NCBI GenBank assembly: GCA_002104945.1 | Contig: MCFH01000014.1 | Location: forward strand, 310,001 to 374,000 | Length of the DNA stretch: 64,000 nt | Direction: 5' to 3' | Source of the DNA: Piromyces finnis finn | Taxonomy: Eukaryota; Fungi; Neocallimastigomycota | Shown here: positions 10,044-54,193 of the stretch, piece by piece | How positions within the stretch are numbered: position 1 is the stretch's first letter | Layout of the letters: every line of letters starts with the position of its first letter | Made by a program: the position numbers and the translations under genes | The notes under the pieces: model-generated | What the model was told of the DNA's origin: nothing | The model's database searches: none | The model's input: only the letters and a program-made list of their open reading frames with translations

Positions 10044-12616
10044 ATGTCTCAAGCTTTATTAACTGTATTTAACGCTGCCAAGAAACAAAACCGTGCTGTT
10101 TTTATTTCTTTTATTACTGCTGGTTACCCAACCAAAGGTAAATATTAGCTTTAATTTGATTGTATCTTGTAAAAATAAATAAACAATCCTATTTATATAT
10201 TAAAATTAATACATTTTAATGGTTTTTTTTTTATATAATACAGATGAAACTGTTGATAATCTTCTTGCTTTACAAAATGGTGGTTCAGATATTATTGAAT
10301 TAGGTACCGACCAATAAGAAGAATAAAAATTAATTTATTATTAATAGAAATAGAAATATATTAAAATTTTTTAATCTATATTAAAATTAATAATTTTTTT
10401 TTTTTTTTTATTTTTAATTAATAAAGGTATTCCATTTTCTGATCCTACTGCTGATGGTCCTATAATCCAGCAAGCTAGCTATGTATGATATTATTTATTT
10501 ATTATTATTGACTTAATAAAAAATAGATGAATAATTTTAGTTTTATAAATAAATAAATGATTAATTAATGTATAATACATAAAATAAATAATATTATACA
10601 GATTTCTTTACAAAATAAAGTTAATCTTGAGGACTGCTTTGAATTTGTAAGAGCTGCTCGTGAAAAGGGTTTAGTTATTCCAGTTATTTTCATGGGTTAC
10701 GCCAATCCATTCGAACAATACGGTTTAGATAAGTTAATGCAAAAGTGTGTTGATATTGGTGTTCAAGGTTTCATTAACATTGATCTTCCACCAGAAGAAA
10801 GTTACGAATTCAGACTTAAGTGTGACAAATACAAGTAAATATCAATGAAAATAATAATATTTTTATATATTTGTATTAAAATTATTACTAATTATTAATT
10901 TTTAATATCATTATTGAAAATATCTTATTATTTGAAAATAGACTCAGTTTAATTCCACTTATTGCTCCAACTACTTCTGAAAAACGAATTGAAAGATTAG
11001 CTAAAACTGCTACTTCTTACATTTACGTCATGAGTGCTCTTGGTGTTACTGGTTACCGTGAAAAGGTTAACTCTGAATTACCACACTTAGTTGCTCGTGT
11101 TAGAAAGCACACTAGTGTTCCAATTGCTGTTGGTTTCGGTGTTTCTACTGCTGAACACTTCAAGATTGTTGAAAAGGAAGCCGATGGTGTTATCATTGGT
11201 TCAAAGATTATTAAGGTCTTAAACAATGCTTCCACTAAGGAACAACGTCTTGCTGATTTAGAAAAGTACTGTAGAGAAGTTTGCCACCGTGAAGGTGAAG
11301 AAATCATTCCAATTGATTACAAGAAGGAAACTCCAGCTGAAGTTCCAAATGTTAAGCAAATTGATTTCAGTCACCATATGGTCAATTCTAAATTCGGAGA
11401 CTTTGGTGGTCAATATGCTGCCGAATCTTTAATTGATTGTCTTGATGAATTAGAAAAGGTTTACCTTACAGCTAAGGAAGATCCATTATTCTGGGAAGAA
11501 TTCAGAAGTTACTATGATTACATGGGAAGAGAATCTAAGCTTCACCTTGCTGACAGATTAACTAAGGAAATGGGAGGTGCTAAGATTTGGTTAAAGCGTG
11601 AAGACTTAAACCATACTGGTTCTCACAAGATCAACAATGCTATTGGTCAAATTCTTTTAGCCAAGCGTCTTGGTAAGAAGAGAATTATTGCCGAAACCGG
11701 AGCAGGTCAACATGGTGTTGCTACAGCTACAGCTTGTGCCAAATTTGGATTAGAATGTGTTGTTTACATGGGAGAGGTTGATGTTAAGAGACAAGCCTTA
11801 AATGTTTTCAGAATGAAGATGTTAGGAGCTAAGGTTGTTGCTGTTACTTCAGGTAGTAAGACCTTAAAGGATGCTGTTAATGAAGCAATGAGAGATTGGG
11901 TTACTAATGTTACCACTACTCACTACTTAGTTGGTTCTGTTTTTGGTCCACATCCATTCCCATCTATTGTTCGTGACTTCCAATCTGTTATTGGAGAAGA
12001 ATCTAAGAAGCAAATGATGGAACAGGCAGGAAAACTTCCAGATTACATTATTGCTTGTGTTGGTGGAGGAAGTAATGCTATGGGTCTCTTCTATCCATAC
12101 ATTAATGAAAAGAATGTTAAGATGCTTGGTGTTGAAGCTGGAGGTAGTGGTATTGAAACTGGTTTACACTCTGCTACTATTTCAGCTGGTACTCCAGGTA
12201 TTCTTCATGGTGCTAAATCTTATTTAATTCAAGATAAAGATGGACAAATACAGGATACCTATAGTATTAGTGCTGGTTTAGATTACCCAGGTGTTGGTCC
12301 AGAACACGCTTTCTTAAAGGATTCTGGTCGTGCTGAATACATTGCTGCTACTGATGAACAAGCTTTAATTGGTTTCCGTAGATTAACCCAATATGAAGGT
12401 ATTATTCCAGCTCTTGAATCTTCTCATGCTGCCTATGCTTGTACTGAATTAGCCAAGACCTTACCAAAGGATAAAGATATTTTATTATGTGTTAGTGGTC
12501 GTGGTGATAAGGATGTTATTTCTATTGCTGCCAACCTTCCAAAGTTTGGACCAAAGATTGGATGGGATCTTAGATTTGATGGAGCTGAAACTCTTGGTAT
12601 CCAAATCCCAAATTAA
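10044..12616 (+). CDS. TRP5: Tryptophan synthase alpha-beta fusion (copy 2), 5 exons
   Basis: Exons 10044-10137, 10244-10303, 10427-10482, 10602-10834 and 10942-12616, with GT-AG introns that keep frame. TrpA motif [17 protein letters not shown] and TrpB PLP-lysine motif [12 protein letters not shown]. Confidence 0.95.
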
Positions 12617-13561: not shown

Positions 13562-15360
13562 TTAGTTAATTCCACACCAATTGCCATCTTCAACACCCCA
13601 ATCACCATCAGCATCTGTATAATAAACATATGAAGTCTTACTACAACATGGATAACCTAAGGTTTCAGACCAACATGAAACAGAATTTGATTTTTTTTCA
13701 ATACCGCACCATTCATTATTTTCAACACCCCAGTCACCACTTTCGTCAGTGTAGACAACAATATCTCCTTTACAACATGAATAACCGAGTTCACTAGACC
13801 AACATTTTGATGAGCTTTCTGAATTGGAGTCGGATCCAGAAGAACTTGTGCCATTGTTGCTGCTACTATCACCATTGTAACTGTCAACATTAAATGATGG
13901 TAATTCATCCATATTCATAACAATTTCATGGTTAAAGTATTCTTTAAGTTGAGCGTTAGTATGGTAAGAATCTTGTAAAATAAATTCACTGTTCCAAGTT
14001 TGGAAATAACCCCACCAAGCATCTTGATCAACACATTGTTGAATATCTGGAATACGTCCATTTTCAGATAAAACAACCATTTTCTTACCACCATAGAAAT
14101 CAAAGTGAGTATTGAAGGCAGTAGTTTGTGGTCCGTGATCATTTGCATAAATATCAACACCAATAATATCAATATAATCAATTGGGGTATATTCATCATT
14201 ATTACCATTCCAAAGCCAAATTAAATTATTTAAACCATGGTAGTTAACCATACGTTCGTATAAAATTTTCCATAATTTAGCACAAGACTTTGGATTGTTA
14301 CCCCACCAGAACCAATCACCATTGTTTTCATGAAGTGGTCTCCAAATTAATGGCATATTAATAGCTTGTAACTTTTTAATATGACCAGAAATACGATCAA
14401 TATCCTTAATAATCTTTTCATATTCCCATGAACCTTCGATTACTGCATTGTCAATATTGAAAGTGGTATCCTTTTTGTAAAAAGCAAAGTCACCAGTTTT
14501 ACCAGCAATATTCCAATGCCATTGGGCAGACATAATACCTTTTCCATCATACTTTTTCCACCAATTAATAGCCATTTCAGTAATATCAGGATTTTGTGGT
14601 CTCCAGGTACAATCATTTGATTCAAAAATGAAATCCATATTCCAAACAGCAGGTAATTTTCCAGAAGCATTCTTAATACGTTGAATTTCTTGACCTTCAT
14701 CACCAGCTTGACCGGCACCACCAACTTGACCAGAAAGAATTCTTTTACCATAATTAGACTTTAAGAAATCATAAAGTTTTCTAGCAGCTGGAATAGCTTT
14801 TGGATTGACTAATGATGAATTAATCTTTGAAGAAACATCCTTAGCAGGGTTTGGTGCATCATTAATGACAAAAGCATCAACCCACATCCAACCCCAGGAA
14901 GCAACAAGACCAATGGTATTCTTTCCTTTTTTTAAGTAAATAGTACCAATATTTTTGGATTCAAATGCTGTATTTTCAGTAAAAGTAATATCACCTGCAC
15001 TTTGACCATTGACTACAAGAGAATTTATTTTTTGACCCATATTAGCACAGTAAACAATAGACAAGTCATACATACCGGTTGATGGTGCATTAACAGTTAC
15101 TGTAACTGAATCACCTGGATTTTCAAATCTTCCAACATAACCAGTTCCAGAAAAACCACTAATATCACCATTCTTATAAGTAGTTACACCACTAAGTTCA
15201 CCATTTTCGGCTTCATAGAAAACTTTAATAAAAATAATTTTTTTTTTATTTAGTAATACTATCCATACTAATTATTTAATTATATTATTTATTAAATACC
15301 TTTTTCAGCAAAAGTTGTTAAAAAAGTTATACAAAGTAATAAAAAATTCAATAATTTCAT
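13562..15360 (-). CDS. Secreted cellulosomal endo-beta-1,4-mannanase: signal peptide, CBM35, GH26 and two fungal dockerins
   Basis: Exon 1 at 15360-15300 ([20 protein letters not shown]) and exon 2 at 15222-13562 (FYEAENG CBM35 start). GH26 motifs WRPLHE and LSENG. Two C-terminal CW..LGY.CC...WGVE..WCGI modules. Confidence 0.93.
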
Positions 15361-21704: not shown

Positions 21705-24700
21705 ACAGTTGAAACTGAATCATCATCACAAGATGAACATAAAGGAGATTCTTCAATAAAAAATCGTTATTGGGCAAAAACAAACTTTGGATTATCCATA
21801 TCATACGAGTTTATAAAAAAATATTTTTTGAGAGATATTGTTTGCAAAAGATCATTAAAATTATATAAAAATGTTGAAATATACCAAAATGAACGTAATA
21901 ATTGCATGTTTCCAATACTGAAAGAATTTCTAGATAGAGAAGTATATAGACCTATGAATTTTATAGATAATCCACAATTCGCAGTGACGCTTTCTTTTAA
22001 TAATAATGATAGTGAATTAGTAATCATAGGACCTCTTTGTAGGTCAAAGGCTCAAGCCAAAATTGAAGCTTCAATGGCTTTATTTAAAATATTATATCAT
22101 TTCAATTGTAAATTACTTCCTTTTGTAGAAGGAAATAATATTATATTAAATAAACTTATGGCAAATAATAATACATCAGCTCAAGATTCAAATAAAAAAA
22201 ATGAAAGTAGTATAGAATTTCCATATGTTTTTTCGAGAAATGGTTGGGAAGATATAAAGTAAGTATAATTCTCTATATATATGTATATGTAAATTATTCA
22301 AATTATTTATTGCTTTTTCCATAATTAAAACAATAAATAAAATATAAATTAAACAAAAATATAGAAATAGCATAAAAAAAAAAATCAATTTAAATTTTAA
22401 ACTGCATGCATTTCAATTAATTACTTATTTTAAATAATAATAATAATAATAAATAAATAAAAATCAATATATTAATTCATTATAAATTTAAAAATATTTA
22501 TCAAAATGTTATTATTTAATATTCTTATAAAATAATACAAGTTCAGAATTTAATTGCTTCGAAAATTTATGTCATCCAAATAATACATTTTTTGTATCTA
22601 TCATTGATTTTATTGATGATCCCATGATGAATTTTGTGGATCCTACCACTAGAGAAAAAAAGAGAATGTATATAGGCTATTTAACAAAAAAGCCAATCCC
22701 AAGAATTGACGATAAATTTTCTTGTTATAATGGTACACAAAAATCAAATTTTTCGTTAACACCATGGGATAAATTCCATATGAATTATTCTCAAGAAGAA
22801 ATTAATGAATTATCCAATTATTTGCAGAATATTTTTGGGTACAAAACCATTGTTAAAAAAAACTCAGATATTCATAATGAAAATAAAGGAGAGAGTTATA
22901 TCATTGATAATAGTGATTGTCAAAGTTTTTTACCCGTTTACTTTAATAGTAATGAATTTTCAAAAATTAGACGATTCCAGGATAAATTATGGGGTTTACT
23001 TTGTGTGAGTTTAGAATTTAAAATGAATAAAGAAACTGATGATATGTATTATATTCTTCCATTTTACAAGTCTCTTGATCAAGAAGATTCAAAAATTAAT
23101 GTAGATTGGTATTACATAAATTATATTCTTCAAGAAAAAGCAAATCCAGATGAAATTACTGTTGCAGACTGGATCGCTACAGTTGACTATCATTTGCAAA
23201 ATAATCAAAAAGATATTATAAGTCCAACCAAGAGTTTTGAAGATAATTATAATGCAGTGAGGGATACCTTTGAAATATTAAAGAAGGATCCTTCCTTTAA
23301 AGAAGAATATAAAACTCGTAACATTAGTCAAGAAAATAAAAGTTATATTTCAGATACCCTTCATAACACCTATTTTAGAACATTGTATAATCGTCGATTA
23401 TATATTTTAAAAGATTTCCATGAAGAGTTAACTATGGATGATGAATTCACCGTTAAAAACTACAATAAAGACGAAGAACCCTATCAAATTTCCTACAAGA
23501 ACTATATCATGAAAAATTATTCAGATATAATGGAAAATTATGAGTATAAATATCCGCAATTTTCATTAGTTTGTGGTAAAGTTTTTTCCCTCCTAAAGAA
23601 TTTTGACTATCATTCCGAAAAAGAACTTGAAGTTCAACGCCGACAAAAAGAAAATAAATCCAAAAAAGAAGGAACTGGTTTCAAAGCTTGGTTCATTCCA
23701 GAATTATGTCATATTTTCCATCTACCGACCTATTGGTTAAAATTTTTACAATATATACCCATTCTAACCTATAAATTAAAAGCCTTTTGTTATATAAGTG
23801 AATTTAGATATGTTATTGGCATTAAACCTCTTAGTATCATAAATTTAACCTATGCTGCCACTTCTAAAAATTCTGATATAATTATGGGAAATCGTCATGA
23901 GCAATTAGAAATGCTCGGAGATACCATCCTTAAATACCTCACCACCATCTATTACTATAATCGTTATCCAGAAAAGGATGAATCTTTTCTTACCTCTATT
24001 CGTATGAAAAATGTCAGTAATGAAAATTTAATTCAATTAACTAATTATTATCAATGGAATCGTTTCTTTTTACAAAAAAAGTTTAGTATTAACTATTTCC
24101 ATCCACCTAACATTAGTATTATTGAAGGAATGCGAATTAGAGAATGTTCTAATGCAATGCATGAAAATAAACCAATAGCAGATTTCTTTGAATCCATTAT
24201 TGGTGCTTGCTTTATTGAAGGAAAAACAATAGCGCAAGGAATTCAAATTTGTCAACTCTTCCTTTCTCGTTCAAAATTAATTATCCCTATTCCGTTTAAT
24301 TATAAACCAACCATTGATGAATACGTTAGAGAACCAGGCTATGACTATGATGAGATAGTTAAAAAAATATGTAAATTTTTAAATCATACCTATTCAAAGG
24401 ATTCAACCCTTTACACCGTTCTTCATCTTATTTCATTAGCTACACCCACAATGCGAAGAGAGTAAGTTTTAACAAATAAATAAGTTTAAAAAAAAAAATT
24501 TTTTTTCTGTCGTTTTTTTTTTCGAACTTTTATACTATGCCATATATAAAATATTGGTTGATAACTATTTATTATGTATATCTATATTTTAGTCACTATT
24601 TTATACTTTAAGCTTATTGGTATAGATACTAATAATTATTTTTTTTTAAAAAAAAAAAAAAAAAAAGATATCAACGTTTAGAATATTTAGGTGATGCTGT

Positions 24701-37560: not shown

Positions 37561-38289
37561 ATACTTAAAAAATTTTAATTATAAATCAATATTTCAAATA
37601 ACACAACAATACTTTAAATACCAACTAATACTACAAATACTGTGATGATATAAATCTTAATGATTAATTATTAATACTAACAATAATTATAGTAAAAACA
37701 CTCAGTGGTGTAATACTATAAATTAGATATATTGTTTATTGCAATTTAATAAAGTGTAAAACAACTAAAAGGAACTTGGTTCCAACTAGTATAATCAATA
37801 CTATTTTATATCAAATAATTTGAAAAACACAATATACCTATATAAATATAATAAATAAGTAAATATATATATATATATATATATAAATATAATAAATACT
37901 ATTAACAATGCAATAACTAACCATGATTTGCAATAATAAGAACTAGTTAATAATTCATGAACTATTCAAAGATTTTATTACCTCTTTAAAATAATAATTT
38001 CTATTACAATAAAAAGTGAACATTTTTTTTATTATTATTCATCTTTATTATACATAATAATAATAAGTTGTGGATTCAATTTATTACTTCAATTTATTAT
38101 TATTAACGTACAAATTGTTCACGACAGATTGTTGTGGTTGTATTCTTCCTTCTTTTTCTTATTTTTAGTCACTCAAAAAAGAATAAAACTGTAGAGATGC
38201 CTTTCCAAATTTGTATGGTTTTACCAACCAATCAAGGCAAGCATTTTTTAAGAGATAAATTATATTATTTTTTAATAATCCTGTAATTA

Positions 38290-38452
38290 TTCACTTATTC
38301 ATTTATTTATTTAGTTATTTAGTTATTCACTTATTCATTTAGTTATTCATTTATTCATTCAGTTATTCACTTATTCATTCAGTTATTCACTTATTCATTC
38401 AGTTATTTATTCATTTAGTTATTTATTCATTTAGTTATTCATTTATTCATTA
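38290..38452. repeat. Degenerate TTATTCA(C/T)/AGTTATTC minisatellite
   Basis: Direct inspection. Confidence 0.85.
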
Positions 38453-39419
38453 TAAAATGTAATTTATTAATTCCTCTAGATATAAATATTTCAATAACTA
38501 TTTTAATTAAAATGTTACTTTTTAACTTTCTCATTAAACTGTTAGAATATGTGAAACGTTATGTCACATGTATTCAAATGTATTGAAATGTATTAAAACG
38601 TATTTGTATATATTGTATTTGATTATATGTTTAAGCCACAATGTAAATGTATAAATACATGTAGTTTTAGAAGAATGTAACGCAAGTAGTTCTTTATCAT
38701 AAAATATATTAATAAAGTTGACATAATTATAAACCTAAATTAAACAACTCTTAATAGATTAAGAGTCTCAATGACTCTCATGAGAGAATATCAATGACTC
38801 TCATTGACTCTCAGATGATTCTCTGAAAGATGAATCAAACCGCCGGACACAGTATGTCATAGGAGAAAACTATTGGAAACCCTAATCCCTACAATATAAG
38901 TTTTAATTGAAAATTATGAAATTTAGAGATCTAAAACTTTGAAATCTTGAAATCTCAAAAACTAAGTCACAAAATTGCCTAATTAACAATACTGACTATA
39001 TAGCGAAAGAAAACTCCGTCCAAGAAACATGGAACATTGATAATATTATACTTTAGACATAAATTAATTTATACTAAATAAAATAATTTAGATTTAGATC
39101 TTAAATTTAAGAATAAACAAACATTTAAATTTAAAAATTAAAATTTATAATTTAAATTTAAGAACAATTGAAATTCAGAAATTTAAGTTGAAATTTAAAA
39201 TTTAAAATAAATAAATTTATCCATTTTTAAAAGTAATTTAAATTTTAAACTAAACAATATGTTTATATTAGAAATAATAGAATTTCATTCTCAACTTACT
39301 TTATTCACCACAAATAGTATAAATTAGCTAATAAAATCCAAAATTTTATTTTATATAATTATTTACAATTGAGTTATTAAATTTCATCAAATATATTAAT
39401 ATTATAAATACTCCAAAGA

Positions 39420-40718
39420 ATGAGATTAAGAAGCAAAGTAATATATTTTTTAAATATTTTTTCGACAATTTTAATTCTACCATTGGTAATTGCTGAAAAT
39501 CAAAAATGTCATGTAACCAATGTCGGAACAGGTGTTTGCGTTGATGAGGATCAATGTAAATTAAATGGTAAACAAACTGGCAATGCTAAAGCATATCCAA
39601 AAATTTGTAAACATGACTCGGAAAAGATTAAATGCTGTATAAAAGATGTCGATACACTTACAGATGGAACAATTCTTCCAACAACAGGAAAATGTAAAAA
39701 TATAAATGAAGGTAACTGTTCAGAAGAATCTTACACGAGATATTTAAACCAATGCCCAGGAGATGATGTTGTTCAACTATGTGTTCCAAATACAAATCTA
39801 AATAATAATACAGATATTGATGATGTAAATTTAAATTTAAATGATAACTGTCTTGAAGTTACAGTTAGTCAAATGCTGCCAATGTTAGATCTATCATACA
39901 CAATTGCTGAAGTTACAATAAAATTTATTGAAGCGTATAAAAATTCTAGGCCATCTACATATGATTATATATCTGATTTAGCTATGGCAATTGGCCATTA
40001 TAGAGGAAAGTCTGGAAAAACAGTACCTGCAAGCAATACTCTAATTAATGAAGAAATGAAAAAGAGTTTGAAATACAAAAATATGAAAAAAGAACTAAAA
40101 AAAATAATTAAAGATAAAGTCACAGATGAAAAAATAAAAAATAAAACTGTAATAAGAAATGCAAAAAATTCAGGTAGAGGACTTTGGTGTTTAACGTTAG
40201 GAAGCTATTATGTCAATATTGATTATGCTTTTTATCCAAAATCCGGATGGAACACTGTTAAAATTCATTTTTCAGGATATGACACATGGGATTTTGAACA
40301 CATCAAAAAGGAGAAAGATCAAAATTTTCTTAAAAATTTTTGGAATGGAATAAAAACTGGAATACATAATATTCTTGATGAAGATATTCCAAGTTTTATC
40401 GCAGGAGATGGTAAAACATATGATATTACTTATGATTTTTATGACGAAGTAACTTTTTTTTATGGATACTCACCTTCAGAGTATTTTAATTTTGGGAAAA
40501 GATCTGTAGATGCATCAAGCGAAATATGTAATTTCTACACATTCAAATACATTGATACATACGACTACATTGATGAAGATGATAAAGATGAAAATGATTC
40601 TTCATTAAATAATAATGATGATTCAAACGGAACTGTAAACTTCAAATATATTTCTCTCGCAAATGTATTTATTATTTTAACGTTAGTAATGTTTTGGCAA
40701 ATAAACATTGTATATTAG
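39420..40718 (+). CDS. Secreted protein: signal peptide, two Cys-rich modules, putative colicin M-like domain, KR site and C-terminal hydrophobic (GPI/TM-like) tail
   Basis: Intact intronless 432-aa ORF. Order-conserved motifs AIGHY, LTLGS, GYDTWDFE and GDGKTYDI parallel colicin M ALAHY, YLGNI, YDDKYDFN and FSGKEYQI as recalled from memory. The ORF itself is certain; the domain call is tentative. Confidence 0.6.
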   Translation: MRLRSKVIYFLNIFSTILILPLVIAENQKCHVTNVGTGVCVDEDQCKLNGKQTGNAKAYPKICKHDSEKIKCCIKDVDTLTDGTILPTTGKCKNINEGNCSEESYTRYLNQCPGDDVVQLCVPNTNLNNNTDIDDVNLNLNDNCLEVTVSQMLPMLDLSYTIAEVTIKFIEAYKNSRPSTYDYISDLAMAIGHYRGKSGKTVPASNTLINEEMKKSLKYKNMKKELKKIIKDKVTDEKIKNKTVIRNAKNSGRGLWCLTLGSYYVNIDYAFYPKSGWNTVKIHFSGYDTWDFEHIKKEKDQNFLKNFWNGIKTGIHNILDEDIPSFIAGDGKTYDITYDFYDEVTFFYGYSPSEYFNFGKRSVDASSEICNFYTFKYIDTYDYIDEDDKDENDSSLNNNDDSNGTVNFKYISLANVFIILTLVMFWQINIVY

Positions 40719-42617
40719 AATTCTCCTAATTTACTCAATTTATTAAATTTATTAATTTGATTTTGATCTACTCACTATGTCAATTTACATTCATCATCAT
40801 TTAAAAATCCATATATTCAATTATGTAAATATTCATGAACACATAATTACATATATTTACCAATATTTCATCTTATTTTCAAAAGAACTAGTTTTATTAA
40901 CATTCATAAAATAGCATTATTGTTATTGAAAGCATAGCATACATATTTATTTCAAGTAAATAAATTGTTTGTGAAATATTCAAATACTTTAACTACTACT
41001 ATTTTAATGAGAAAATATTCTTTCCGCCATAGAGGAAAGATAGAACATAAAGAAAATACATAAAATTTATACAATTAGAAACATGAATTAGAATAATTAA
41101 ACATTATTTGATAAGTTTGTATAAAATACCCTATTGTAATGAAATTATGCAATAAACATTGAAACTATCCTTGTGAAAATGTCAATCAATTTCTTTATGA
41201 TAATTTCACTCAAATCAGTATTATATAATTTAATCCAGTATACTATTCTTTGAATTAAATCATTATAACAATACTTTAAGATAATATTTAGCCTCAAAAG
41301 CATTATTTAAATTATTGCTACCTATAAAGCAAATATATTACTGGTCAAATGCTCATCCCGTAGGCTGTTATTGCTAATATACATAGCAAATATTTCAAAT
41401 GAGGTAATTTATTAAAGTTAGAAATGCTTAGCGTGAAATGAGCATATTCTACATATATATATACTTTGAATAACCTAGCGTGAAATGGGTATATTCAATA
41501 ATATTTTAACAACTTATCATGATTTAACTTAGCGTGAAATGAGTTATATTCATAGATAATTATTAATGATGGTTTTAGACCTATATATATTTAATTTGGT
41601 CCCATCAATAACAATGTAGCACCTTCATAGTAAGGGCTCCTTAGATTTAGATGACATTGATTCATCATATTTATTTATTACCAACATTCAAGAATGTTGT
41701 GACGCCGTTTTAAAATATAATTTACGGTGATTTAGTAACCTCATATATAAATCGCCACTTTCAACGTAGTGAGTGATCGCCGACCAATTAGCTAACATTC
41801 TAATTAACCGAGCCGACTTCGATATAATTTAGAAGAACTTTATTCTCTTCAACAATCGATATTTTAAATGTCATTATCTTACAATATTAACTTGTTATAA
41901 TTTTACTGGTATATCTACTTATTTTAATTTGAAGTAAAGAAATACATAATTGAGGAATATTTTATTCATTAGTTTGATATTCACTACATTAAAATATATT
42001 ATCATGAAAATATTATTTCACTATATTTTAAAGGATAAGCAATTGAGAAAAATGAATGAAAACATTAGAATATGTTATTTATTATTTATATAGGTATTAA
42101 TACTTATCGTATATGTTATGGAAAATTATTCATTATTATGAAAATTTGATGCAAAATGAATGAAATTTTATGAAATTTAAATTTCTCTTTTTCAAATCTA
42201 AGTATTTATTACTAAACATCTAGATTTGAGGGGGAAGTAGTGAATATACGAAATTTAAAATTAAAGATAATAATTTTTGTTTCTAGTTAAACATTGGAAA
42301 TAACTAAAACATTGCATAGAAACTAAGGCTTAATAAATAGAATGAATTGAAATTCAAATTGTAAAAATTTATAAGATTCAATATGTAAAAATGAAAAGAA
42401 CAAAATTTCAAATACAAAGTAAAATATTCTTAAATATTATAAGAATAATTAATCAATACAAAAGGCATAAAAGGAAGGAAAAACACCTAAAAGAAAATGT
42501 TAAAATTCAATATACATATACTAAATAACTATTAAGGATTTAATTAAAATTTTACCATTATTAATTAGTATTTACAAATAGATTGAAATACAATTATGCT
42601 AATATTCTAAAGAAAAT

Positions 42618-42925
42618 TGTAATTATAAGGACATAAAACCAGAGAGTTATCCATAGGTTGTCCGAAGAACGTAAAACCAAGAAGATTAACCATAGGTTGT
42701 TAAGAGAACGTAAAACCAAAAAGAGTTATCCATATGTGTTGTCATAAGGACGTAAAATCAAAGGTTAACCATGAGTTGTTAAGAAAACGTAAAACCAAAG
42801 AGGTAAACCATGCGTTGTCATAAGGACGTAAAATCAAAGAGATAAACCATGTGTTATCTATAATTCTGTGTAAATCTCAGAGAGATTACCAATATAGTTT
42901 ATAGGATAATGTAAAACCGGAAGGG
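42618..42925. repeat. Degenerate tandem array of about 8 units of 38-40 bp inside the LTR element
   Basis: Recurrent TTGT...ACGTAAAA(C/T)CAA...(T/A)ACCAT. Confidence 0.85.
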
Positions 42926-44112
42926 TTTTCAATCCTTAATGGATGGTATAACAATTTATGAATATCCAATCCAAATTTTAAACTTTAATACTACCCAATT
43001 ATACAAAGGTTTTCAGTTTATCCATAAAAACGAAGTTATAGGGTAATATTTAAATTCTTTAAAGCAATTAGCGAATAATATATGTGAAATATTTTAAATT
43101 CCAATTAATGAAATATAAAAATTTTAAACATTAGATTTAGTTTATAGTTAATAGTTTAGAAATAATAAAATGCACATATTCACCAGCAAACCAAATTTTA
43201 CTTAGTAGAAAATTAGGTTTGAGGGGGAATGTTAGAATATGTGAAACGTTATGTCACATGTATTCAAATGTATTGAAATGTATTAAAACGTATTTGTATA
43301 TATTGTATTTGATTATATGTTTAAGCCACAATGTAAATGTATAAATACATGTAGTTTTAGAAGAATGTAACGCAAGTAGTTCTTTATCATAAAATATATT
43401 AATAAAGTTGACATAATTATAAACCTAAATTAAACAACTCTTAATATAAACTTTGAAAATTAATTTAAAAAATTTAATTTTGGCTTTTTTTTTTTTTTAA
43501 TATATAAAAATAAATTGATTTTTTGTTATTGTTTTATATTAAAAAATGATATTGAAGCCGCTGTTATGCTTTATTTTTATTATTCATGGAAAGGCTTTTT
43601 TTTTTTTTTAATCTATAAAATAATTATTAAAGTAAAAATAGTTTCATTGCCATATTACTCTATTTATTTTATATGAAATATGTGTTTTTTTTTTTTTTTT
43701 TTTTGAATTCTGTTAGTGTAAAAACAGGATATACAGAATTAAATAATTTTAATTAAAAAATTTATAAATTTTATAAAAGTTTAAAAAAAATTGATGAGTT
43801 TCTAAAAAACGTATTTTAATAATAAAATAATCATTATCAATAACTATATATGTTTATTCCTATTATTTTTTATATACCTTTTTTTCTTTTATACTCTTTT
43901 TTTTTTTTTTTTTTTTTAAATATCTTTAATAATCGTTAGTTTTATTATTTATCGATTTTTTTTTTTATCTGTCACAGGTAAAAATTATTTTAAATAACTA
44001 TTTTATGGTTATACAAAATATTTTCGTGTAACAAACCTCTTTTAATTATACCAAAATTGAACCTTAATTTAGGTATGACAAAATTTCATTTTCTGTTATT
44101 TTATTGGCTTAT

Positions 44113-44790
<678 letters not shown>

Positions 44791-50380: not shown

Positions 50381-53300
50381 ATGTATTCAGCATCGTTAAG
50401 TCAACCAGAATCTTTAAAACAAAATGATGAGGATGATAGTTTTGGAGGTTCATTCAGTTTAAGTCAACCAAATTTAACATTAAATTCTTATTTGACTTCC
50501 CCTGATTACTCACCAAGATTATCATCCTTTCAATCCAATATCCGATCACCACCAGCAATAATGATGACATCTCTCAATGGACCTAAATCTTTTAATAATA
50601 ATGAAAATAATACATTACAAAATAGGAACCATGATGGTAACTCATTTTCATCATCAAAAGTGATATCAATAGATAATTTTAAGCATTCTAATTATTATGT
50701 TTCTCCAATTACCACACCAAAAATAGTATCTCCTGTATTAAGTAATGATGCTTTGGATTCATTTTCTCCATCCATAAAGTATTATCCTTTGTCCCCAGAT
50801 CATCCTGGAAGAAAAAATAGTTCATATGAAAAAAGAGGTAGAAAAAAGTCAGTTGTTCACGCTCTTGAAAATATTATTGAACCCAATCATCAACTTGATC
50901 CTGTACAAAATGAAATAAAAAAATCAAAGTATGAACGGAATTTTGATGAATATCAACTTGGAAATAATAAAAAGTGCAAGGTTCTTTATGAAGGTCAATT
51001 TAATCGTTGGATTGAAGAAGATCCCTATTCTATTTATTCTGATGATGTCATTCGTTTCTCAACAAAACCTTCCTCAACCATTGAACAACGTAATGATCTT
51101 TCTTTTGAAAGAATTGTCAGCCAAAATAATAATGGTTACTGGCAAAAAAATAATTTTTTAATCACCAAAAATGAAATCATTCTTTTCCCTAATGGTAAAT
51201 GGGATAATCGAGTGGTGGAGGTCATGACCATCACAGATGATATTAATATTTCCATTTCTAGTATTCTTATTGCAAGATTGGAATGGATCATTGAAGTAAA
51301 AACAATTGAAAGTAATGTATATACCCAAAGTAATTTCATCTATCAGACCAGTCAAGCCCATCATCATGAAAAGGAGGCCAAATCAAATCATGGTGATAGT
51401 GTAGAATCTAAAATGAATAAGGATGCTAAATTAGGAAGTGAAAAAAATAGCAATAAAACCAATAATGCTTCTACCACTTCTAATTCATCTCGTTCCGTTC
51501 AATGGATTCTTAAATTTTATGATCGTGAATCCATGCTTTACTTTATCTCCCTCATAAAATACATTCAAACTAAAAAAAGTAATAGATTAGCAAATGAAGA
51601 AAAACAGGCATGGGATATCCTAGAAAGTGATATCAGTAGTTTTAGTAGTAGTGAAGATAATGAGGAAAAACATGCTGCTCTAACAAAATCAATGTTTAGT
51701 TCCTTGCCTTTGGAAACAAAGCCAACAAACAAATTTGAAACTGCCTTTTTACCAACATTTAATTATGCCACCGGTTTTTCTTTCAATTCAAATGAACTTG
51801 GCCAAAATTCACATCCACCTCGTCGTGAAAGAACTTCATCTCTTGGGGAACATTACTATAATCCAGGTCTTGAAAGAAAGGGTAGTACAAAAAAGACAAG
51901 TCCTTTTTCACCCGTTTTAGAAACAAAGGGTGAATATTCTGAGTTTAATCTTAGAAACAAGTCTACCACCTATCTCAAGAGTCAACAACAACAACAACAA
52001 CAACAACCAAACCATGAAGAAAAACGAACAACCAAAGATTTAGATAAAAAAGGTTTAGAAGCTCTCACTAATGATGTTAATGCTCTATTGAAAGATTCCA
52101 TTCAAAAAGCAGAACTAGAAATTATGAAACTTCAGAACTGGAGTAATAATAGGCCTCATTCATCTATTAATAATGGAGTAGGATCCACTTCTGTCATTAA
52201 AGAAGAAGAAGAAAAAGAAGAAAAAGAGGCGGAAGAAGAAAAAAAAGAAAATAGAGGAAGCGAAGGAGAAAAAGAAGAAAAAGAAAAACACGGCAATAAA
52301 TCATTGAGTTCACCGAAAACAAATTGGCAGGGTTCAAGAGATAGAACCGATAGAACTAGAAGATCAAAGATTAATAATTGGAATCCTAATTCAAGCGCTG
52401 CAATTTTTACCAACATTCAACTCTCTTATTTAGATATGTTGGAAAACAAAGCAAAGAATAAGATTATCAAGCTTAATAAAAGCTCAACCGCAACTTCAAA
52501 AGATACTACGGTTCAAACCAAATCGACCAACACCGAAAATCCTATAACAGAAGAAGAAAGCAATAGTAAAACAGAAAATTCAAAGTTAAAAACCTATTCT
52601 GTTCCACCCCAAAGACATCGTCGTAGTAGTTCTCTTACCCAAACTTTTATAAAGGATAATGAATTCATCGCCAGAAGAAGGGATAGTTTTTCTGCTGGAA
52701 GTAAAATTCATCCTATGGCTCTTCCACTTTCTTCCCCATCCTCAAAGTATAATTCCATTTCTACAGACCTCACCGGTATATCGGATGGTTCTTCTAGCAA
52801 TATTTTAAGAAAAGGTAGCTTAACAGGAATGAGTAATAATTCTAGTTTCTATTCACCTCGTTCTTCTTCCCTTTTCATGGACGATATTAACATTTTACAA
52901 AAGAATAGTCAAAAGAGAATATCTGGTGTATTTAGCCCAGATATGAAATCCAATTCCATGTTAAGCGCCTCGGCTGGCTCAGAAATACCGGTGGTAGATC
53001 AAAAATCATTAAATAATGACTTTAATTTATTCCAATATGGCATATCCTCTAATGATAGTGATGGTCCTATTCAGCGTCATTCAATTCAATCCAATGGCAG
53101 TCATAATTCCTTAGATAGTAGTGGTGAAGCTATCGGTTATAGTACTTCGAAATCAACACCTGATGTTGGTCAAGTCTTGACGGTATTACAAAAAAATGGT
53201 TTAGAAGGGATTGATTTACCTATTCCTCCAATAAAGGAAGATGATTATTCCACCCCATCTACTGGTGTTAAAAATACCATCACTCCTCCAAGACGTTCTT

Positions 53301-54193
53301 CAAGCTACCATAGAGTGTGTAATAGTACTGGTAGTATTAACATGATGGAACCATCATTATCTTTATCTCAGCCTTTGGCCACCATCACCACTTCTACCAT
53401 TTCCTCTTCGTCTAACCATTTAAATCCTAATACCGCTGTAACCGAAGGTCGTTCAAGAAGTGGAAGCAAAACTTTCCTTTATTCCCTCTATCGTTCAAAT
53501 AGTGCAAGAAGTGCAAGAAGTACGAGAAAGGGCTTTAATACTTATTTGGATACGAACGTAAAATTATCCAATAATGGTCATGTGTCATCAACAAGTATGA
53601 CACCGCTTGATACCAAAGATAGTGACAATCCTCGAATGAGTAATAAGGATAATGACATGAACAAAAATGAAGCTTTTTATACTTCGGATATAAATTATCA
53701 TCCTTATATGATGGATTTGAAATCCTCCAATGAGCTTTACCTTGCTTCCCTTCAACAACAAATTCAACAACAACAGCAACAGCAGCAACAACGTCAATTT
53801 TCAATGATGCCAAATTCACCACCTTTAAATAATTCCAATTATTCTTCTGTTTTGGTTTCACCAACCGTTCCAGGAAACACATCATTCTCCAATAGTCATA
53901 TCAATATTCATTCTCAACCTCAATCACCAGTTATTTCTCATATTCAACCAAATACATTTACTGGTGGTATGAATGATAATAATTATGATTCTTCATTTTC
54001 TTCTTCATCCAAATCATTACTTCTCAAGTATTCTGATTCCCAAAATCAATTAGTGACCGTTGATTTAAACGACGAATCCATAATTCCTACTTCCTTTTTA
54101 AAAAATTATCCAAAGAATAATTCAACAACCGTCAACCCAGTGATTAGAAATTCTTTAAAAATTTTAAATATATTGGAACAAACCTATCTTTAA
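50381..54193 (+). CDS. Hypothetical 1270-aa Ser/Asn-rich protein with a possible PH-like domain (about aa 205-400)
   Basis: Long single-exon ORF with raised GC. Folded-looking region VLYEGQFNRW...FLITKNEIILF...WILKFYDRESMLYFISLIKYI, otherwise low complexity. Confidence 0.8.
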   Translation: MYSASLSQPESLKQNDEDDSFGGSFSLSQPNLTLNSYLTSPDYSPRLSSFQSNIRSPPAIMMTSLNGPKSFNNNENNTLQNRNHDGNSFSSSKVISIDNFKHSNYYVSPITTPKIVSPVLSNDALDSFSPSIKYYPLSPDHPGRKNSSYEKRGRKKSVVHALENIIEPNHQLDPVQNEIKKSKYERNFDEYQLGNNKKCKVLYEGQFNRWIEEDPYSIYSDDVIRFSTKPSSTIEQRNDLSFERIVSQNNNGYWQKNNFLITKNEIILFPNGKWDNRVVEVMTITDDINISISSILIARLEWIIEVKTIESNVYTQSNFIYQTSQAHHHEKEAKSNHGDSVESKMNKDAKLGSEKNSNKTNNASTTSNSSRSVQWILKFYDRESMLYFISLIKYIQTKKSNRLANEEKQAWDILESDISSFSSSEDNEEKHAALTKSMFSSLPLETKPTNKFETAFLPTFNYATGFSFNSNELGQNSHPPRRERTSSLGEHYYNPGLERKGSTKKTSPFSPVLETKGEYSEFNLRNKSTTYLKSQQQQQQQQPNHEEKRTTKDLDKKGLEALTNDVNALLKDSIQKAELEIMKLQNWSNNRPHSSINNGVGSTSVIKEEEEKEEKEAEEEKKENRGSEGEKEEKEKHGNKSLSSPKTNWQGSRDRTDRTRRSKINNWNPNSSAAIFTNIQLSYLDMLENKAKNKIIKLNKSSTATSKDTTVQTKSTNTENPITEEESNSKTENSKLKTYSVPPQRHRRSSSLTQTFIKDNEFIARRRDSFSAGSKIHPMALPLSSPSSKYNSISTDLTGISDGSSSNILRKGSLTGMSNNSSFYSPRSSSLFMDDINILQKNSQKRISGVFSPDMKSNSMLSASAGSEIPVVDQKSLNNDFNLFQYGISSNDSDGPIQRHSIQSNGSHNSLDSSGEAIGYSTSKSTPDVGQVLTVLQKNGLEGIDLPIPPIKEDDYSTPSTGVKNTITPPRRSSSYHRVCNSTGSINMMEPSLSLSQPLATITTSTISSSSNHLNPNTAVTEGRSRSGSKTFLYSLYRSNSARSARSTRKGFNTYLDTNVKLSNNGHVSSTSMTPLDTKDSDNPRMSNKDNDMNKNEAFYTSDINYHPYMMDLKSSNELYLASLQQQIQQQQQQQQQRQFSMMPNSPPLNNSNYSSVLVSPTVPGNTSFSNSHINIHSQPQSPVISHIQPNTFTGGMNDNNYDSSFSSSSKSLLLKYSDSQNQLVTVDLNDESIIPTSFLKNYPKNNSTTVNPVIRNSLKILNILEQTYL

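What the first reader, a model, noticed from the sequence alone, without database searches (positions are those of the whole stretch)
38540..43446. Recently inserted LTR element whose only gene is a secreted cargo protein
Seen: identical 217-bp LTRs, a TAAAC TSD, a polypurine tract, no gag/pol ORF, and one intact, intronless, sense-oriented 432-aa secreted-protein gene. Established: LTRs are identical at insertion, and non-autonomous LTR elements are mobilised in trans. Inference: a spliced host effector mRNA was captured and is being spread by copia machinery, making this an LTR-borne vehicle for effector genes in a gut fungus.
Basis: partly seen in the sequence, partly recalled or inferred. 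Interest (0 to 1): 0.85.

Follow-up and report, generated by a model that had tools for sequence, protein, structure and literature searches.

The report
Retrotransposon carrying swappable antibacterial toxin genes
In the gut fungus Piromyces finnis, a very young jumping element with no replication genes of its own carries an intact, fast-evolving gene for a surface or secreted protein with a colicin M-like (bacterial cell-wall toxin) fold, and its roughly 25 sister copies hold a lysozyme, a second wall-cutting enzyme or a dead copy of a spliced host gene in the same slot.

Summary
There are identical 217-bp LTRs, a TAAAC target-site duplication and a polypurine tract. There is no gag/pol, and there is one intact 432-aa ORF.

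This is one copy of a non-autonomous, copia-type LTR family in Piromyces finnis, and the family was active recently:
- At least 25 full copies and 9 solo LTRs were found. Of these, 28 of 29 have their own 5-bp duplication.
- The primer-binding site is a perfect 15-nt complement of the anticodon arm of the host tRNA-Lys(CUU). Many RVT_2 (copia) elements share it.

The family is built as backbone, then one exchangeable slot, then 2.5 kb of conserved non-coding DNA. The slot holds one of:
- this ORF (3 copies);
- the same N-terminal domain and C-terminal tail around a GH24 lysozyme (6 copies);
- a colicin M-like plus NlpC/P60-fold protein (1 copy);
- an unrelated ORF;
- a dead, intron-less retrocopy of a class II aminoacyl-tRNA synthetase gene (11 copies).

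The window's toxin domain has a colicin M-like fold and occurs in this genome only inside these elements.

The cargo ORFs stay open, carry only in-frame indels and have dN/dS above 1.

The autonomous partner is unresolved, and expression could not be tested.

The scan had already found this family on sister copies elsewhere in the genome.

The parts
38535..38539 (+). Target-site duplication, left copy (TAAAC)
   Evidence: Read directly. It is identical to 43447-43451.
38540..38756 (+). 5' LTR, 217 bp, TGTTAG...TTAATA. TATAAATA at LTR position 111 (window 38650-38657) and AATAAA at LTR position 172 (window 38711-38716).
   Evidence: 100% identical to the 3' LTR. At least 41 genomic copies at 98-100% identity. 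Motifs found by script.
38756..38770 (+). Primer-binding site AGATTAAGAGTCTCA, complementary to the anticodon stem-loop of tRNA-Lys(CUU). It overlaps the last LTR base. The LTR end and the PBS together form a 9+9-nt palindrome.
   Evidence: The genome's tRNA-Lys(CUU)-like gene at C227:117743-117783 contains TGAGACTCTTAATCT, the exact complement. The same PBS follows varied LTR ends: 227 places match the 19-mer at up to 3 mismatches, and several lie about 3.2 kb upstream of RVT_2 hits.
38757..39419 (+). 663-nt AT-rich 5' leader that belongs to the element backbone. It contains 9 upstream ATGs.
   Evidence: Shared at 92%, up to about 13 nt before the start codon, with subfamily E (L047), which carries an unrelated ORF. 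ATG count.
39420..40718 (+). Cargo ORF, 432 aa. Signal-like segment at residues 1-25. Cys-rich N-domain at residues 26-137. Colicin M-like toxin domain. Acidic/Asn linker. Hydrophobic C-terminal tail at residues 411-432.
   Evidence: ORF list. 99% identical to Piromyces finnis BCR36DRAFT_371635, which is the sister copy on C157. No Pfam hit. Hydropathy.
39495..39830 (+). Cys-rich N-terminal module made of two small disulfide-type units. Its function is unknown; it may be a targeting or binding module.
   Evidence: Shared at 75-88% aa identity with the lysozyme-bearing cargo. Similar units are repeated three times in metagenomic relative P0003. No Atlas or word-search relatives.
39942..40463 (+). 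Toxin-type domain with a colicin M-like fold. It belongs to a family of about 160 aa that has no Pfam model.
   Evidence: Profile hit at these coordinates. AF2 model with pLDDT 84.6. The best PDB matches are all colicin M-family bacteriocins or the T6SS effector BtpeA, with Z 5.3-7.5 over 131-147 residues. Atlas shape hits are Colicin_M, DUF3289, RHS and MuF toxin tips.
40650..40715 (+). C-terminal hydrophobic tail, preceded by DSNG. It looks like a GPI-anchor or membrane-anchor signal.
   Evidence: Highest hydropathy window in the protein. The tail is conserved at 73-83% in the lysozyme cargo (B) and the colicin M-like + NlpC/P60 cargo (C). The GPI reading is inference.
40749..43220 (+). Conserved non-coding 3' backbone, about 2.5 kb. 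It starts about 31 nt after the cargo stop codon. It contains a 3x repeat around 41413-41545 and 5 tandem 39-nt units at 42646-42881.
   Evidence: 93-98% identical in about 25 copies, whatever the cargo. No open piece over 60 aa and no Rfam family. Repeats.
43221..43229 (+). Polypurine tract GAGGGGGAA
   Evidence: Read directly. The 17-mer TTGAGGGGGAATGTTAG is exact in 38 places, including next to copia RT hits.
43230..43446 (+). 3' LTR
43447..43451 (+). Target-site duplication, right copy (TAAAC)

Best explanation
The stretch is a freshly inserted copy of a non-autonomous Ty1/copia-type LTR retrotransposon family of Piromyces finnis.

How the element most likely moves:
- It keeps only cis parts: LTRs with a TATA box and a poly(A) signal, a PBS that pairs with the anticodon arm of tRNA-Lys(CUU) (half-tRNA priming), a long leader, a 2.5-kb conserved non-coding 3' region and a PPT.
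- It is reverse-transcribed and integrated in trans by the proteins of a resident copia element (inferred).

The cargo slot:
- Between the leader and the 3' region lies a slot whose content has been exchanged repeatedly.
- The exchange most likely happened by template switching or recombination during reverse transcription (inferred from the mosaic pattern).
- In one subfamily the slot shows direct traces of a captured spliced mRNA (shown).

The cargo in this copy:
- The slot holds an intact gene for a signal-peptide-bearing, probably surface-anchored protein.
- The protein is built like a polymorphic toxin: a Cys-rich N-terminal module, an exchangeable enzymatic domain and a common C-terminal tail.
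- Here the enzymatic domain has a colicin M-like fold. It most likely attacks the bacterial cell-wall precursor lipid II or a related polyprenyl-linked substrate (inferred).
- Sister copies carry a GH24 lysozyme, or the colicin M-like domain plus an NlpC/P60-fold peptidase.

The cargo is kept functional and is diversifying (shown statistically). The element therefore acts as a copy-number amplifier and domain shuffler for antibacterial-type genes that this rumen-type fungus holds nowhere else in its genome.
For: Vehicle:
- Identical LTRs, TSD and PPT.
- At least 41 LTR copies.
- 19 of 20 elements and 9 of 9 solo LTRs have their own 5-bp TSD, and LTR pairs differ by 0-2 substitutions in the 16 pairs compared in register.
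- The PBS is an exact 15-nt complement of the tRNA-Lys(CUU) anticodon arm and is shared with RVT_2 elements.
- There is no coding remnant outside the ORF.

Slot:
- The backbone is 93-98% identical among copies while the slot content differs.
- A and E share everything up to about 13 nt before the ATG. A and B share the N-domain and the tail but not the middle domain.
- The D cargo matches a chromosomal class II aaRS gene in four blocks. These are contiguous in the element but separated by about 160, 95 and 92 nt in the gene.

Cargo function:
- Pfam Phage_lysozyme, E 1e-23 to 1e-25, in B copies.
- NlpC/P60 fold for the extra domain of C, with all of the top 50 Foldseek hits in that family and an invariant Cys.
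- Colicin M-family and BtpeA entries take the top 13 Foldseek hits, the top 12 VIA re-alignment hits and the top 5 of 48,161 representatives.
- Atlas feature and shape hits are DUF3289, Colicin_M, and RHS and MuF toxin tips. [quoted passage not shown]
- Relatives are fused to ricin-B or hevein lectin modules, a toxin-like A-B layout.

Selection:
- All 9 toxin-type ORFs examined are intact.
- ORF indels are only 3 or 6 nt, against arbitrary lengths in the flanks. In three of the five pairs compared, the ORF substitution rate exceeds that of the flanks.
- dN/dS is 1.6-2.6 among B copies and for the N-domain between A and B.
- Neutral simulations keep the frame open in only 0.5-2.8% of runs.

Only inside the element:
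- The colicin M-like profile hits 4 places, all LTR-borne.
- PF00959 hits the 6 LTR-borne copies plus one weak hit elsewhere.
Against:
- The 663-nt leader has 9 upstream ATGs, so translation from the full-length element RNA would be poor. No internal promoter was shown.
- The colicin M relation rests on fold only, with Z 5.3-7.5, which the tool itself calls middling.
- There is no sequence-level link: no Pfam hit and no PDB profile hit.
- The catalytic motif DxYD(x5)HR (PMC8469651) is not present. Only a YDF core is conserved.
- Some relatives carry chitin-binding modules, which could mean a non-bacterial target.
- The autonomous partner was not identified. One copia family (about 1542 aa) shares the LTR end plus PBS 19-mer, and another shares the PPT plus LTR start 17-mer. 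None shares the 38-nt leader.
- NG86 dN/dS may be biased in an 80% A+T genome.
Confidence: 0.65

Rival explanations
1. The ORF is a mere passenger with no function for the fungus or the element. It would be a recently captured sequence that has not yet had time to decay, like the synthetase pseudogene in subfamily D.
For: The most abundant subfamily (D, 11 copies) carries a dead cargo, so cargo function is not needed for mobility. No expression evidence could be obtained. There are many upstream ATGs.
Against: Copies differ by up to 8.5% in the ORF, yet all 9 toxin-type ORFs examined are open. Indels are in-frame only, and neutral simulations keep the frame open in at most 2.8% of runs. dN exceeds the divergence of the non-coding flanks.
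Confidence: 0.1
2. The cargo is a toxin or effector aimed at eukaryotes (other fungi, protists or the animal host), as the first reader's word 'effector' implies, and not at bacteria.
For: Relatives of the domain are fused to hevein-type chitin-binding or ricin-B lectin modules. Relatives occur in gut eukaryotes such as Tritrichomonas musculus. Polyprenyl-linked sugars also exist in eukaryotes (PMC8469651). The colicin M catalytic motif is not conserved.
Against: The two other enzymatic cargo types in the same slot and the same protein frame are peptidoglycan hydrolases: GH24 lysozyme and the NlpC/P60 fold. Peptidoglycan is a substrate found only in bacteria. All structural neighbours are antibacterial toxins.
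Confidence: 0.15
3. The ORF is not captured cargo. It would be an ancestral gene of this element lineage (for example an env-like surface protein that serves the element), with the other cargos as later replacements.
For: The signal peptide plus C-terminal anchor layout resembles a surface glycoprotein. Older, diverged LTR elements with the same PBS and a near-identical PPT (C152:619538-623379 and C208:151351-155192) carry a 483-aa ORF whose N-domain is 41% identical. A gene of this type has therefore travelled with this kind of element for some time.
Against: The middle domains have enzyme or toxin folds, not fusion-protein folds. Paralogues of the N-domain also exist in a tandem cluster (C184:236-249 kb) that gave no LTR, PBS or PPT hit in the listed results. 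ORF-less D copies are the most successful.
Confidence: 0.08
4. The LTR pair is an assembly or segmental duplication artefact, not a transposition.
For: None beyond the perfect identity of the two repeats. One pair of solo-LTR loci (L008 and L022) has identical flanks, so some duplicated assembly does exist.
Against: There are dozens of copies on different contigs with their own TSDs, a PBS and PPT in the right places, and solo LTRs with TSDs.
Confidence: 0.01

Closest known systems
Gene-carrying LTR retrotransposons of plants (maize Bs1; surveys in rice and sorghum, PMC3726574; TRIM gene capture, bioRxiv 10.1101/010850)
   Same: An LTR element that holds host-derived sequence between its LTRs and spreads it by retrotransposition. 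In the D subfamily the captured sequence has lost its introns, as expected for capture at the RNA level.
   Different: To my knowledge, plant cases mostly carry gene fragments or chimeras of doubtful function. Here the cargo is a complete ORF that is kept open and is diversifying. The same slot has been refilled at least five times. For the toxin domains there is no chromosomal parent at all. I found no such case reported for Neocallimastigomycota.
LARDs (large retrotransposon derivatives), non-autonomous LTR elements
   Same: Several kb long, no gag/pol, a long conserved non-coding internal domain, mobilised in trans.
   Different: To my knowledge LARDs are non-coding. This family has a coding slot.
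Acutely transforming, replication-defective retroviruses (transduced spliced cellular genes, helper-dependent) - own knowledge
   Same: gag-pol is replaced by a cellular or foreign ORF between the leader and the 3' end. The element depends on a helper. Cargo is taken up as processed RNA.
   Different: This is an intracellular copia-type element, not an infectious virus. The cargo is a toxin-type enzyme. There are many cargo variants.
Colicin M family (PF14859) and DUF3289 type VI effectors (PMC8469651; PMC11148199)
   Same: Fold of the catalytic domain: Z 5.3-7.5 with 131-147 of about 176 residues aligned. A conserved YDF near the C-terminal strand. Modular toxins with exchangeable delivery parts.
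   Different: 12-15% identity and no Pfam hit. The DxYD(x5)HR motif is absent. The protein is eukaryotic, with a signal peptide and an anchor instead of bacterial receptor and translocation domains.
Bacterial polymorphic toxin systems (own knowledge)
   Same: A constant N-terminal part and a swappable C-terminal toxin domain (colicin M-like, lysozyme, NlpC/P60). Rapid diversification.
   Different: The swapping takes place in a eukaryotic retrotransposon. No immunity gene is expected or seen.
Horizontally acquired antibacterial genes of eukaryotes (GH25 lysozyme, PMC4241558; bivalve GH24 phage lysozyme, PMC5303276; Trichomonas NlpC/P60, PDB 6biq)
   Same: A eukaryote holds bacterial or phage-type cell-wall hydrolases.
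   Different: Here these genes reside only in an active retroelement. Horizontal origin was not tested by phylogeny.
Half-tRNA priming of copia/Ty5-type elements (own knowledge)
   Same: The PBS pairs with the anticodon stem-loop of a tRNA, not with its 3' end.
   Different: The known cases use initiator tRNA-Met. Here it is tRNA-Lys(CUU).

Membership tests
LTR retrotransposon (class I, order LTR) | Two direct long terminal repeats, near-identical at insertion | tested here: met
   217 bp, 100% identical.
LTR retrotransposon (class I, order LTR) | Target-site duplication of fixed length that differs between copies | tested here: met
   TAAAC here. 19 of 20 elements and 9 of 9 solo LTRs have their own 5-bp TSD.
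LTR retrotransposon (class I, order LTR) | PBS next to the 5' LTR, complementary to a host tRNA, and a PPT next to the 3' LTR | tested here: met
   15-nt complement of the tRNA-Lys(CUU) anticodon arm. GAGGGGGAA abuts the 3' LTR.
Ty1/copia superfamily (as a non-autonomous derivative) | Cis signals shared with RVT_2-type elements of the same genome, and a 5-bp TSD | tested here: met
   The 19-mer of LTR end plus PBS is exact about 3.2 kb upstream of RVT_2 in a copia family of about 1542 aa. The 17-mer of PPT plus LTR start is exact next to other RVT_2 hits.
Ty1/copia superfamily (as a non-autonomous derivative) | An identified autonomous partner with homologous LTRs and leader | tested here: inconclusive
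   LTR copies at 98% or more belong only to the non-autonomous family. A 38-nt leader pattern hits no copia. Copia LTRs could not be read.
Non-autonomous LTR element (LARD-like) | No gag, protease, integrase or RT coding capacity | tested here: met
   There is one ORF of 80 aa or more, and it has no retroelement domain. The 3' region has no open piece over 60 aa.
Colicin M family (PF14859) | Sequence match to the family model | tested here: not met
   No Pfam hit at E up to 1 for the ORF or up to 10 for 28 family members. The profile against PDB sequences finds no colicin M.
Colicin M family (PF14859) | Fold of the catalytic domain | tested here: met
   Top 12 VIA hits and all 5 cluster representatives, Z 5.3-7.5, 131-147 residues aligned; the next unrelated hit is Z 3.1 in the re-alignment, or aligns only 67-80 residues in the wide search. 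Atlas TM 0.54 to a Colicin_M cluster. The support is moderate.
Colicin M family (PF14859) | Catalytic motif DxYD(x5)HR (PMC8469651) | tested here: not met
   The alignment of 28 relatives conserves ITYDF but has no His-Arg 7-8 residues downstream. No residue-level structural superposition was available.
Colicin M family (PF14859) | Cleavage of lipid II between undecaprenol and the pyrophosphoryl group | not testable with these tools
   Needs a biochemical assay.
GPI-anchored or secreted fungal surface protein | N-terminal signal peptide and C-terminal hydrophobic anchor signal | tested here: inconclusive
   Hydropathy maxima lie at residues 10-25 and 411-425. No dedicated predictor was available.
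Retrocopy of a spliced mRNA (for the window's ORF) | An intron-containing parental gene elsewhere in the genome | tested here: not met
   The domain profile finds only the 4 LTR-borne copies. The feature is met only for the sister D cargo.

The most novel reading that the evidence does not exclude
The family is a eukaryotic, retrotransposon-based counterpart of bacterial polymorphic toxin systems. Reverse-transcriptase template switching between co-packaged element RNAs would shuffle toxin domains (colicin M-like, GH24 lysozyme, NlpC/P60) behind a constant targeting module. Retrotransposition would amplify the domains, and selection on the fungus for antibacterial warfare in the gut would keep them intact. 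A parasitic element would thus have become the sole carrier and diversity generator of horizontally acquired weapons.
Probability: 0.35. Interest if true: 0.9.

Novelty: new variant of a known kind. Interest (0 to 1): 0.78.

Why it matters
Gene capture by LTR retrotransposons is known mainly from plants, and mostly yields fragments. Here a fungal element carries whole, selected genes, and its slot has been refilled several times. One refill still shows the missing introns, which catches the mechanism in the act.

If the cargo is antibacterial, this shows how an anaerobic gut fungus that competes with dense bacterial populations can multiply and reshuffle cell-wall-attacking enzymes. It would also add a eukaryotic branch to the colicin M-like fold.

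The backbone (LTR, half-tRNA PBS, leader, 3' region, PPT) is in effect a natural retro-vector. That is of practical interest for a group of fungi with few genetic tools.

Tried and rejected
I did not try to fetch these letters by other tools, so all statements about those places rest on coordinates only.
No letters of 38344-38381 were sent to any search tool afterwards; later searches used 38540-43446 or parts of it.
- A 38-nt leader pattern searched for a helper with the same leader. It hit only D- and C-type copies of this family.
- Pfam on the ORF, on 28 relatives and on the N-domain context found nothing consistent.
- A profile search against PDB sequences found only noise.
- Atlas and word-index searches with the N-domain found no relatives beyond the LTR-borne proteins.
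- Contigs of metagenomic relatives (L051-L055) showed no LTR context.
- L056 shares only the 25-mer, probably by chance.
- A possible splice donor GTATGT in the leader was rejected because it is not conserved among subfamilies.
- No poly(A) remnant lies at the 3' edge of any cargo. Capture therefore did not simply retain an mRNA tail.
- Rfam found nothing in the element.
- One reference-frame slip was corrected.

Full report
**Observation**

- Window 38540-38756 and 43230-43446 are 217-nt direct repeats, 100% identical.
- They begin TGTTAG and end TTAATA.
- TAAAC stands immediately outside both repeats.
- GAGGGGGAA abuts the 3' repeat.
- The only ORF of 80 aa or more between 38000 and 44000 is 39420-40718 (+), 432 aa.
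- The 2.5 kb behind the ORF has no stop-free piece longer than 60 aa on either strand and no Rfam family.

**Organism and setting**

- The ORF is 99% identical to Piromyces finnis BCR36DRAFT_371635, which is the sister copy on another contig.
- The window also holds a GH26 gene with CBM10 dockerin modules, typical of anaerobic gut fungi.
- The window is G000:C46:310001-374000 of a 56.5-Mb assembly in 232 contigs.

**A real, young, multi-copy retroelement family**

- The LTR has at least 41 copies at 98-100% identity on many contigs. Many are paired 4.4-4.7 kb apart.
- I fetched 20 full elements.
- 19 of them have their own 5-bp target-site duplication. Sixteen LTR pairs differ by 0-2 substitutions; the remaining four were compared out of register because of indels or a truncated LTR. 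All keep the same PPT.
- Nine further hits are solo LTRs, all with duplications.
- This rules out an assembly artefact and shows repeated, recent retrotransposition.
- The LTR has TATAAATA at position 111 and AATAAA at position 172, as expected for U3/R/U5.

**Primer site and superfamily**

- The 15 nt AGATTAAGAGTCTCA, which begin with the last LTR base, are the exact complement of the anticodon stem-loop of a tRNA-Lys(CUU)-like gene of this genome (C227:117743-117783).
- Priming is therefore from an internal tRNA site. This is the copia/Ty5 style, but with tRNA-Lys rather than initiator tRNA-Met (the comparison is my own knowledge).
- The same PBS follows many different LTR ends. The 19-mer has 227 places at up to 3 mismatches, against 35 for the control.
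- In several families it lies about 3.2 kb upstream of RVT_2 hits.
- Among these, a copia family of about 1542 aa shares the whole 19-mer, including the LTR end TTAATA (C227, C123, C191, C159, C155).
- Another copia group shares the 17-mer of PPT plus LTR start exactly (C206, C229, C198, C188, C159).
- No copia shares a 38-nt leader pattern.
- LTR copies at 98% or more belong only to the gene-less family.
- The element is thus copia-type and must be mobilised in trans.

**Modular anatomy**

Pairwise comparisons show this order:
1. LTR.
2. Leader.
3. Variable slot.
4. Conserved 3' region, which starts about 31-60 nt after the cargo stop codon.
5. PPT.
6. LTR.

The backbone is 93-98% identical among copies whatever the slot holds. 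The slot contents are:

| Subfamily | Cargo | Copies |
|---|---|---|
| A | this 432-434-aa ORF | 3: window, C157, C192 |
| B | 400-401-aa ORF | 6 |
| C | 514-aa ORF | 1 |
| D | no ORF | 11 |
| E | unrelated 196-aa ORF | at least 1 |

There is also a deletion derivative.

The break points are sharp:
- A and E are 92% identical from the LTR to about 13 nt before the start codon, and then unrelated.
- B and C behave the same way.
- A and B share the signal peptide and the Cys-rich N-domain (78-80% DNA identity, 75-88% aa identity) and the C-terminal tail, but have unrelated middle domains.

This mosaic is what template switching between co-packaged RNAs would give. That mechanism is inferred, not shown.

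**Capture of a spliced mRNA is shown, but in subfamily D**

- The D slot contains frame-broken pieces that match the class II aminoacyl-tRNA synthetase core (tRNA-synt_2b, E 7e-5 and 2e-3, consecutive profile positions). By eye it looks like seryl-tRNA synthetase.
- Its DNA matches one chromosomal gene, C1:662516-663663, in four blocks of 83-89% identity.
- The blocks are contiguous in the element but separated by about 160, 95 and 92 nt in the gene.
- The element copy therefore lacks three introns.
- No poly(A) remnant sits at the cargo's 3' edge.

**The window's cargo**

The protein has five parts:
- a hydrophobic signal-like start;
- a Cys-rich module of two small units (residues 26-137);
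- a middle domain;
- an acidic/Asn linker;
- a strongly hydrophobic last 22 residues preceded by DSNG.

I read the last part as a GPI or membrane anchor signal; this is inference.

Evidence on the middle domain:
- It has no Pfam match.
- It has 50 representative relatives in a library of 1.84 billion proteins. Most are metagenomic. One is from the gut protist Tritrichomonas musculus.
- Several relatives are fused to ricin-B or hevein-type lectin modules.
- An AlphaFold model built on 28 relatives has pLDDT 84.6.
- The top 13 Foldseek hits are all colicin M-family bacteriocins or the Bacteroides T6SS effector BtpeA (E 1.4e-3 to 0.17).
- VIA re-alignment gives Z 5.3-7.5 over 131-147 residues for these 12 entries, and Z 3.1 for the next unrelated one.
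- In a Foldseek-independent pass over 48,161 representatives, the five best are again colicin M-family bacteriocins (four) and BtpeA.
- ESM Atlas shape hits (TM 0.53-0.59) are a Colicin_M cluster, DUF3289, RHS/YD-shell tips and MuF toxin tips. Feature hits agree.

Against membership:
- Identity is 12-15%.
- The catalytic motif DxYD(x5)HR (PMC8469651) is absent. Only ITYDF is conserved at the corresponding C-terminal strand.

I therefore call it colicin M-like in fold. It is a probable cell-wall-precursor hydrolase, but not a demonstrated family member.

**The theme across cargos**

- B copies carry a Pfam-significant phage-type (GH24) lysozyme in the same frame (E 1e-23 to 1e-25).
- The C copy has the colicin M-like domain plus a further domain.
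- That further domain's model (pLDDT 85) hits only NlpC/P60 peptidoglycan hydrolases among the top 50.
- It has an invariant Cys and a conserved His-containing GDIITDG-H motif.
- Three different enzymatic modules, all pointing at bacterial cell walls, in one protein frame, make the antibacterial reading coherent.

**Only inside the element**

- A profile of the colicin M-like domain finds four places in the genome, all LTR-borne.
- PF00959 finds the six LTR-borne lysozymes and one weak hit.
- There is thus no chromosomal parent for the window's cargo.
- Paralogues of the N-domain alone exist in a tandem cluster on C184.
- They also exist in two older LTR elements with the same PBS, C152:619538-623379 and C208:151351-155192.

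**Selection**

- All 9 toxin-type ORFs examined are intact.
- Between copies, ORF indels are 3 or 6 nt only. The flanking backbone of the same pairs has indels of 1, 2, 4, 5, 7, 10 nt and so on.
- In three of the five pairs compared, the ORF substitution rate (5.5-8.5%) exceeds that of the flanks (0.2-5.4%).
- dN/dS is 1.8-2.6 among B copies and 1.6-2.4 for the N-domain between A and B. It is 0.4-0.8 among A copies overall.
- Simulations used the substitution spectrum of the non-coding backbone. They keep the frame open in only 0.5-2.8% of runs.
- This argues for maintained function with diversification.
- Caveat: the NG86 estimates come from an extremely A+T-rich genome.

**What is missing**

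- Expression. The runs holding the ORF are of uncertain type.
- The leader has 9 upstream ATGs, so how the ORF is translated is open.
- The helper element is unresolved.
- The role of the conserved 2.5-kb 3' region is unexplained. It contains a 39-nt tandem array whose copy number varies between copies.

**Comparison and verdict**

- The vehicle is a member of a known kind: a non-autonomous, LARD-like copia derivative with captured genes, as in plants (PMC3726574).
- What is unusual is a reusable slot with whole, selected, toxin-type genes that exist nowhere else in the genome, in a fungus. A literature search for retrotransposons in Neocallimastigomycota gave nothing comparable.
- Earlier notes of this scan on sister copies reached the same picture.

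Noticed in passing
G000:C152:619538-623379 and G000:C208:151351-155192 (coordinates only): Two elements of about 3.8 kb with the exact LTR-end/PBS 19-mer and a PPT one mismatch away. They carry a 483-aa ORF whose N-terminal part is 41% identical to the window ORF. This looks like an older sister family of cargo-bearing LTR elements.
   Followed up: partly
G000:C184:236173-248934 (coordinates only): Tandem cluster of six genes or pseudogenes (open frames of 364-385 aa, two with a stop). Their N-terminal part is 37-41% identical to the Cys-rich module. They may be chromosomal relatives of the cargo's targeting module.
   Followed up: no
window 38747-38766: The last 9 nt of the LTR and the first 9 nt after the next two bases form a perfect palindrome (ACTCTTAAT / ATTAAGAGT). 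The U5 end therefore mimics the tRNA-Lys anticodon loop that the PBS binds. The meaning is unknown.
   Followed up: no
window 42646-42881 and 41413-41545: A tandem array of 39-nt units and a triple repeat containing TAGCGTGAAATG lie inside the conserved non-coding 3' region. Indels of 76-80 nt between copies fit the gain or loss of two 39-nt units. It could be a cis signal; this was not tested.
   Followed up: no
L057 (metagenome contig Ga0138317_1061349): A 1.4-kb contig with 20% G+C is 67-71% identical to the LTR, the leader and the end of the 3' region. They are arranged as 3' region-LTR-leader. This is a diverged relative of the family in another organism or sample.
   Followed up: partly
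L008 (C203:114669) and L022 (C81:12451): Two solo-LTR loci have identical flanks and the same TSD. They are probably the same locus assembled twice, or a segmental duplication.
   Followed up: no
window 2776-7281 (-): A 1502-aa ORF with an RVT_1 reverse transcriptase domain and no other Pfam hit. It is a different retroelement (LINE-like or gypsy-like) in the same window.
   Followed up: no
window 50381-54193 (+): A 1270-aa ORF with no Pfam family at E up to 0.001.
   Followed up: no
window 13565-15073 (-), 11030-12616 (+), 22624-24465 (+): Three ordinary genes near the element: a GH26 mannanase-type gene with CBM35 and two CBM10 dockerins; a tryptophan synthase gene (PALP plus part of the alpha chain); and an RNase III-domain gene.
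   Followed up: no
window 38240-38475 and 44092-44500: Degenerate short-period tandem repeats (8/12-nt and 9-15-nt periods) flank the insertion.
   Followed up: no
L047:1441-2028 (G000:C196): The subfamily E cargo is an intact 196-aa ORF with no signal peptide and no Pfam hit. It is unrelated to the toxin cargos. Its origin was not sought.
   Followed up: partly
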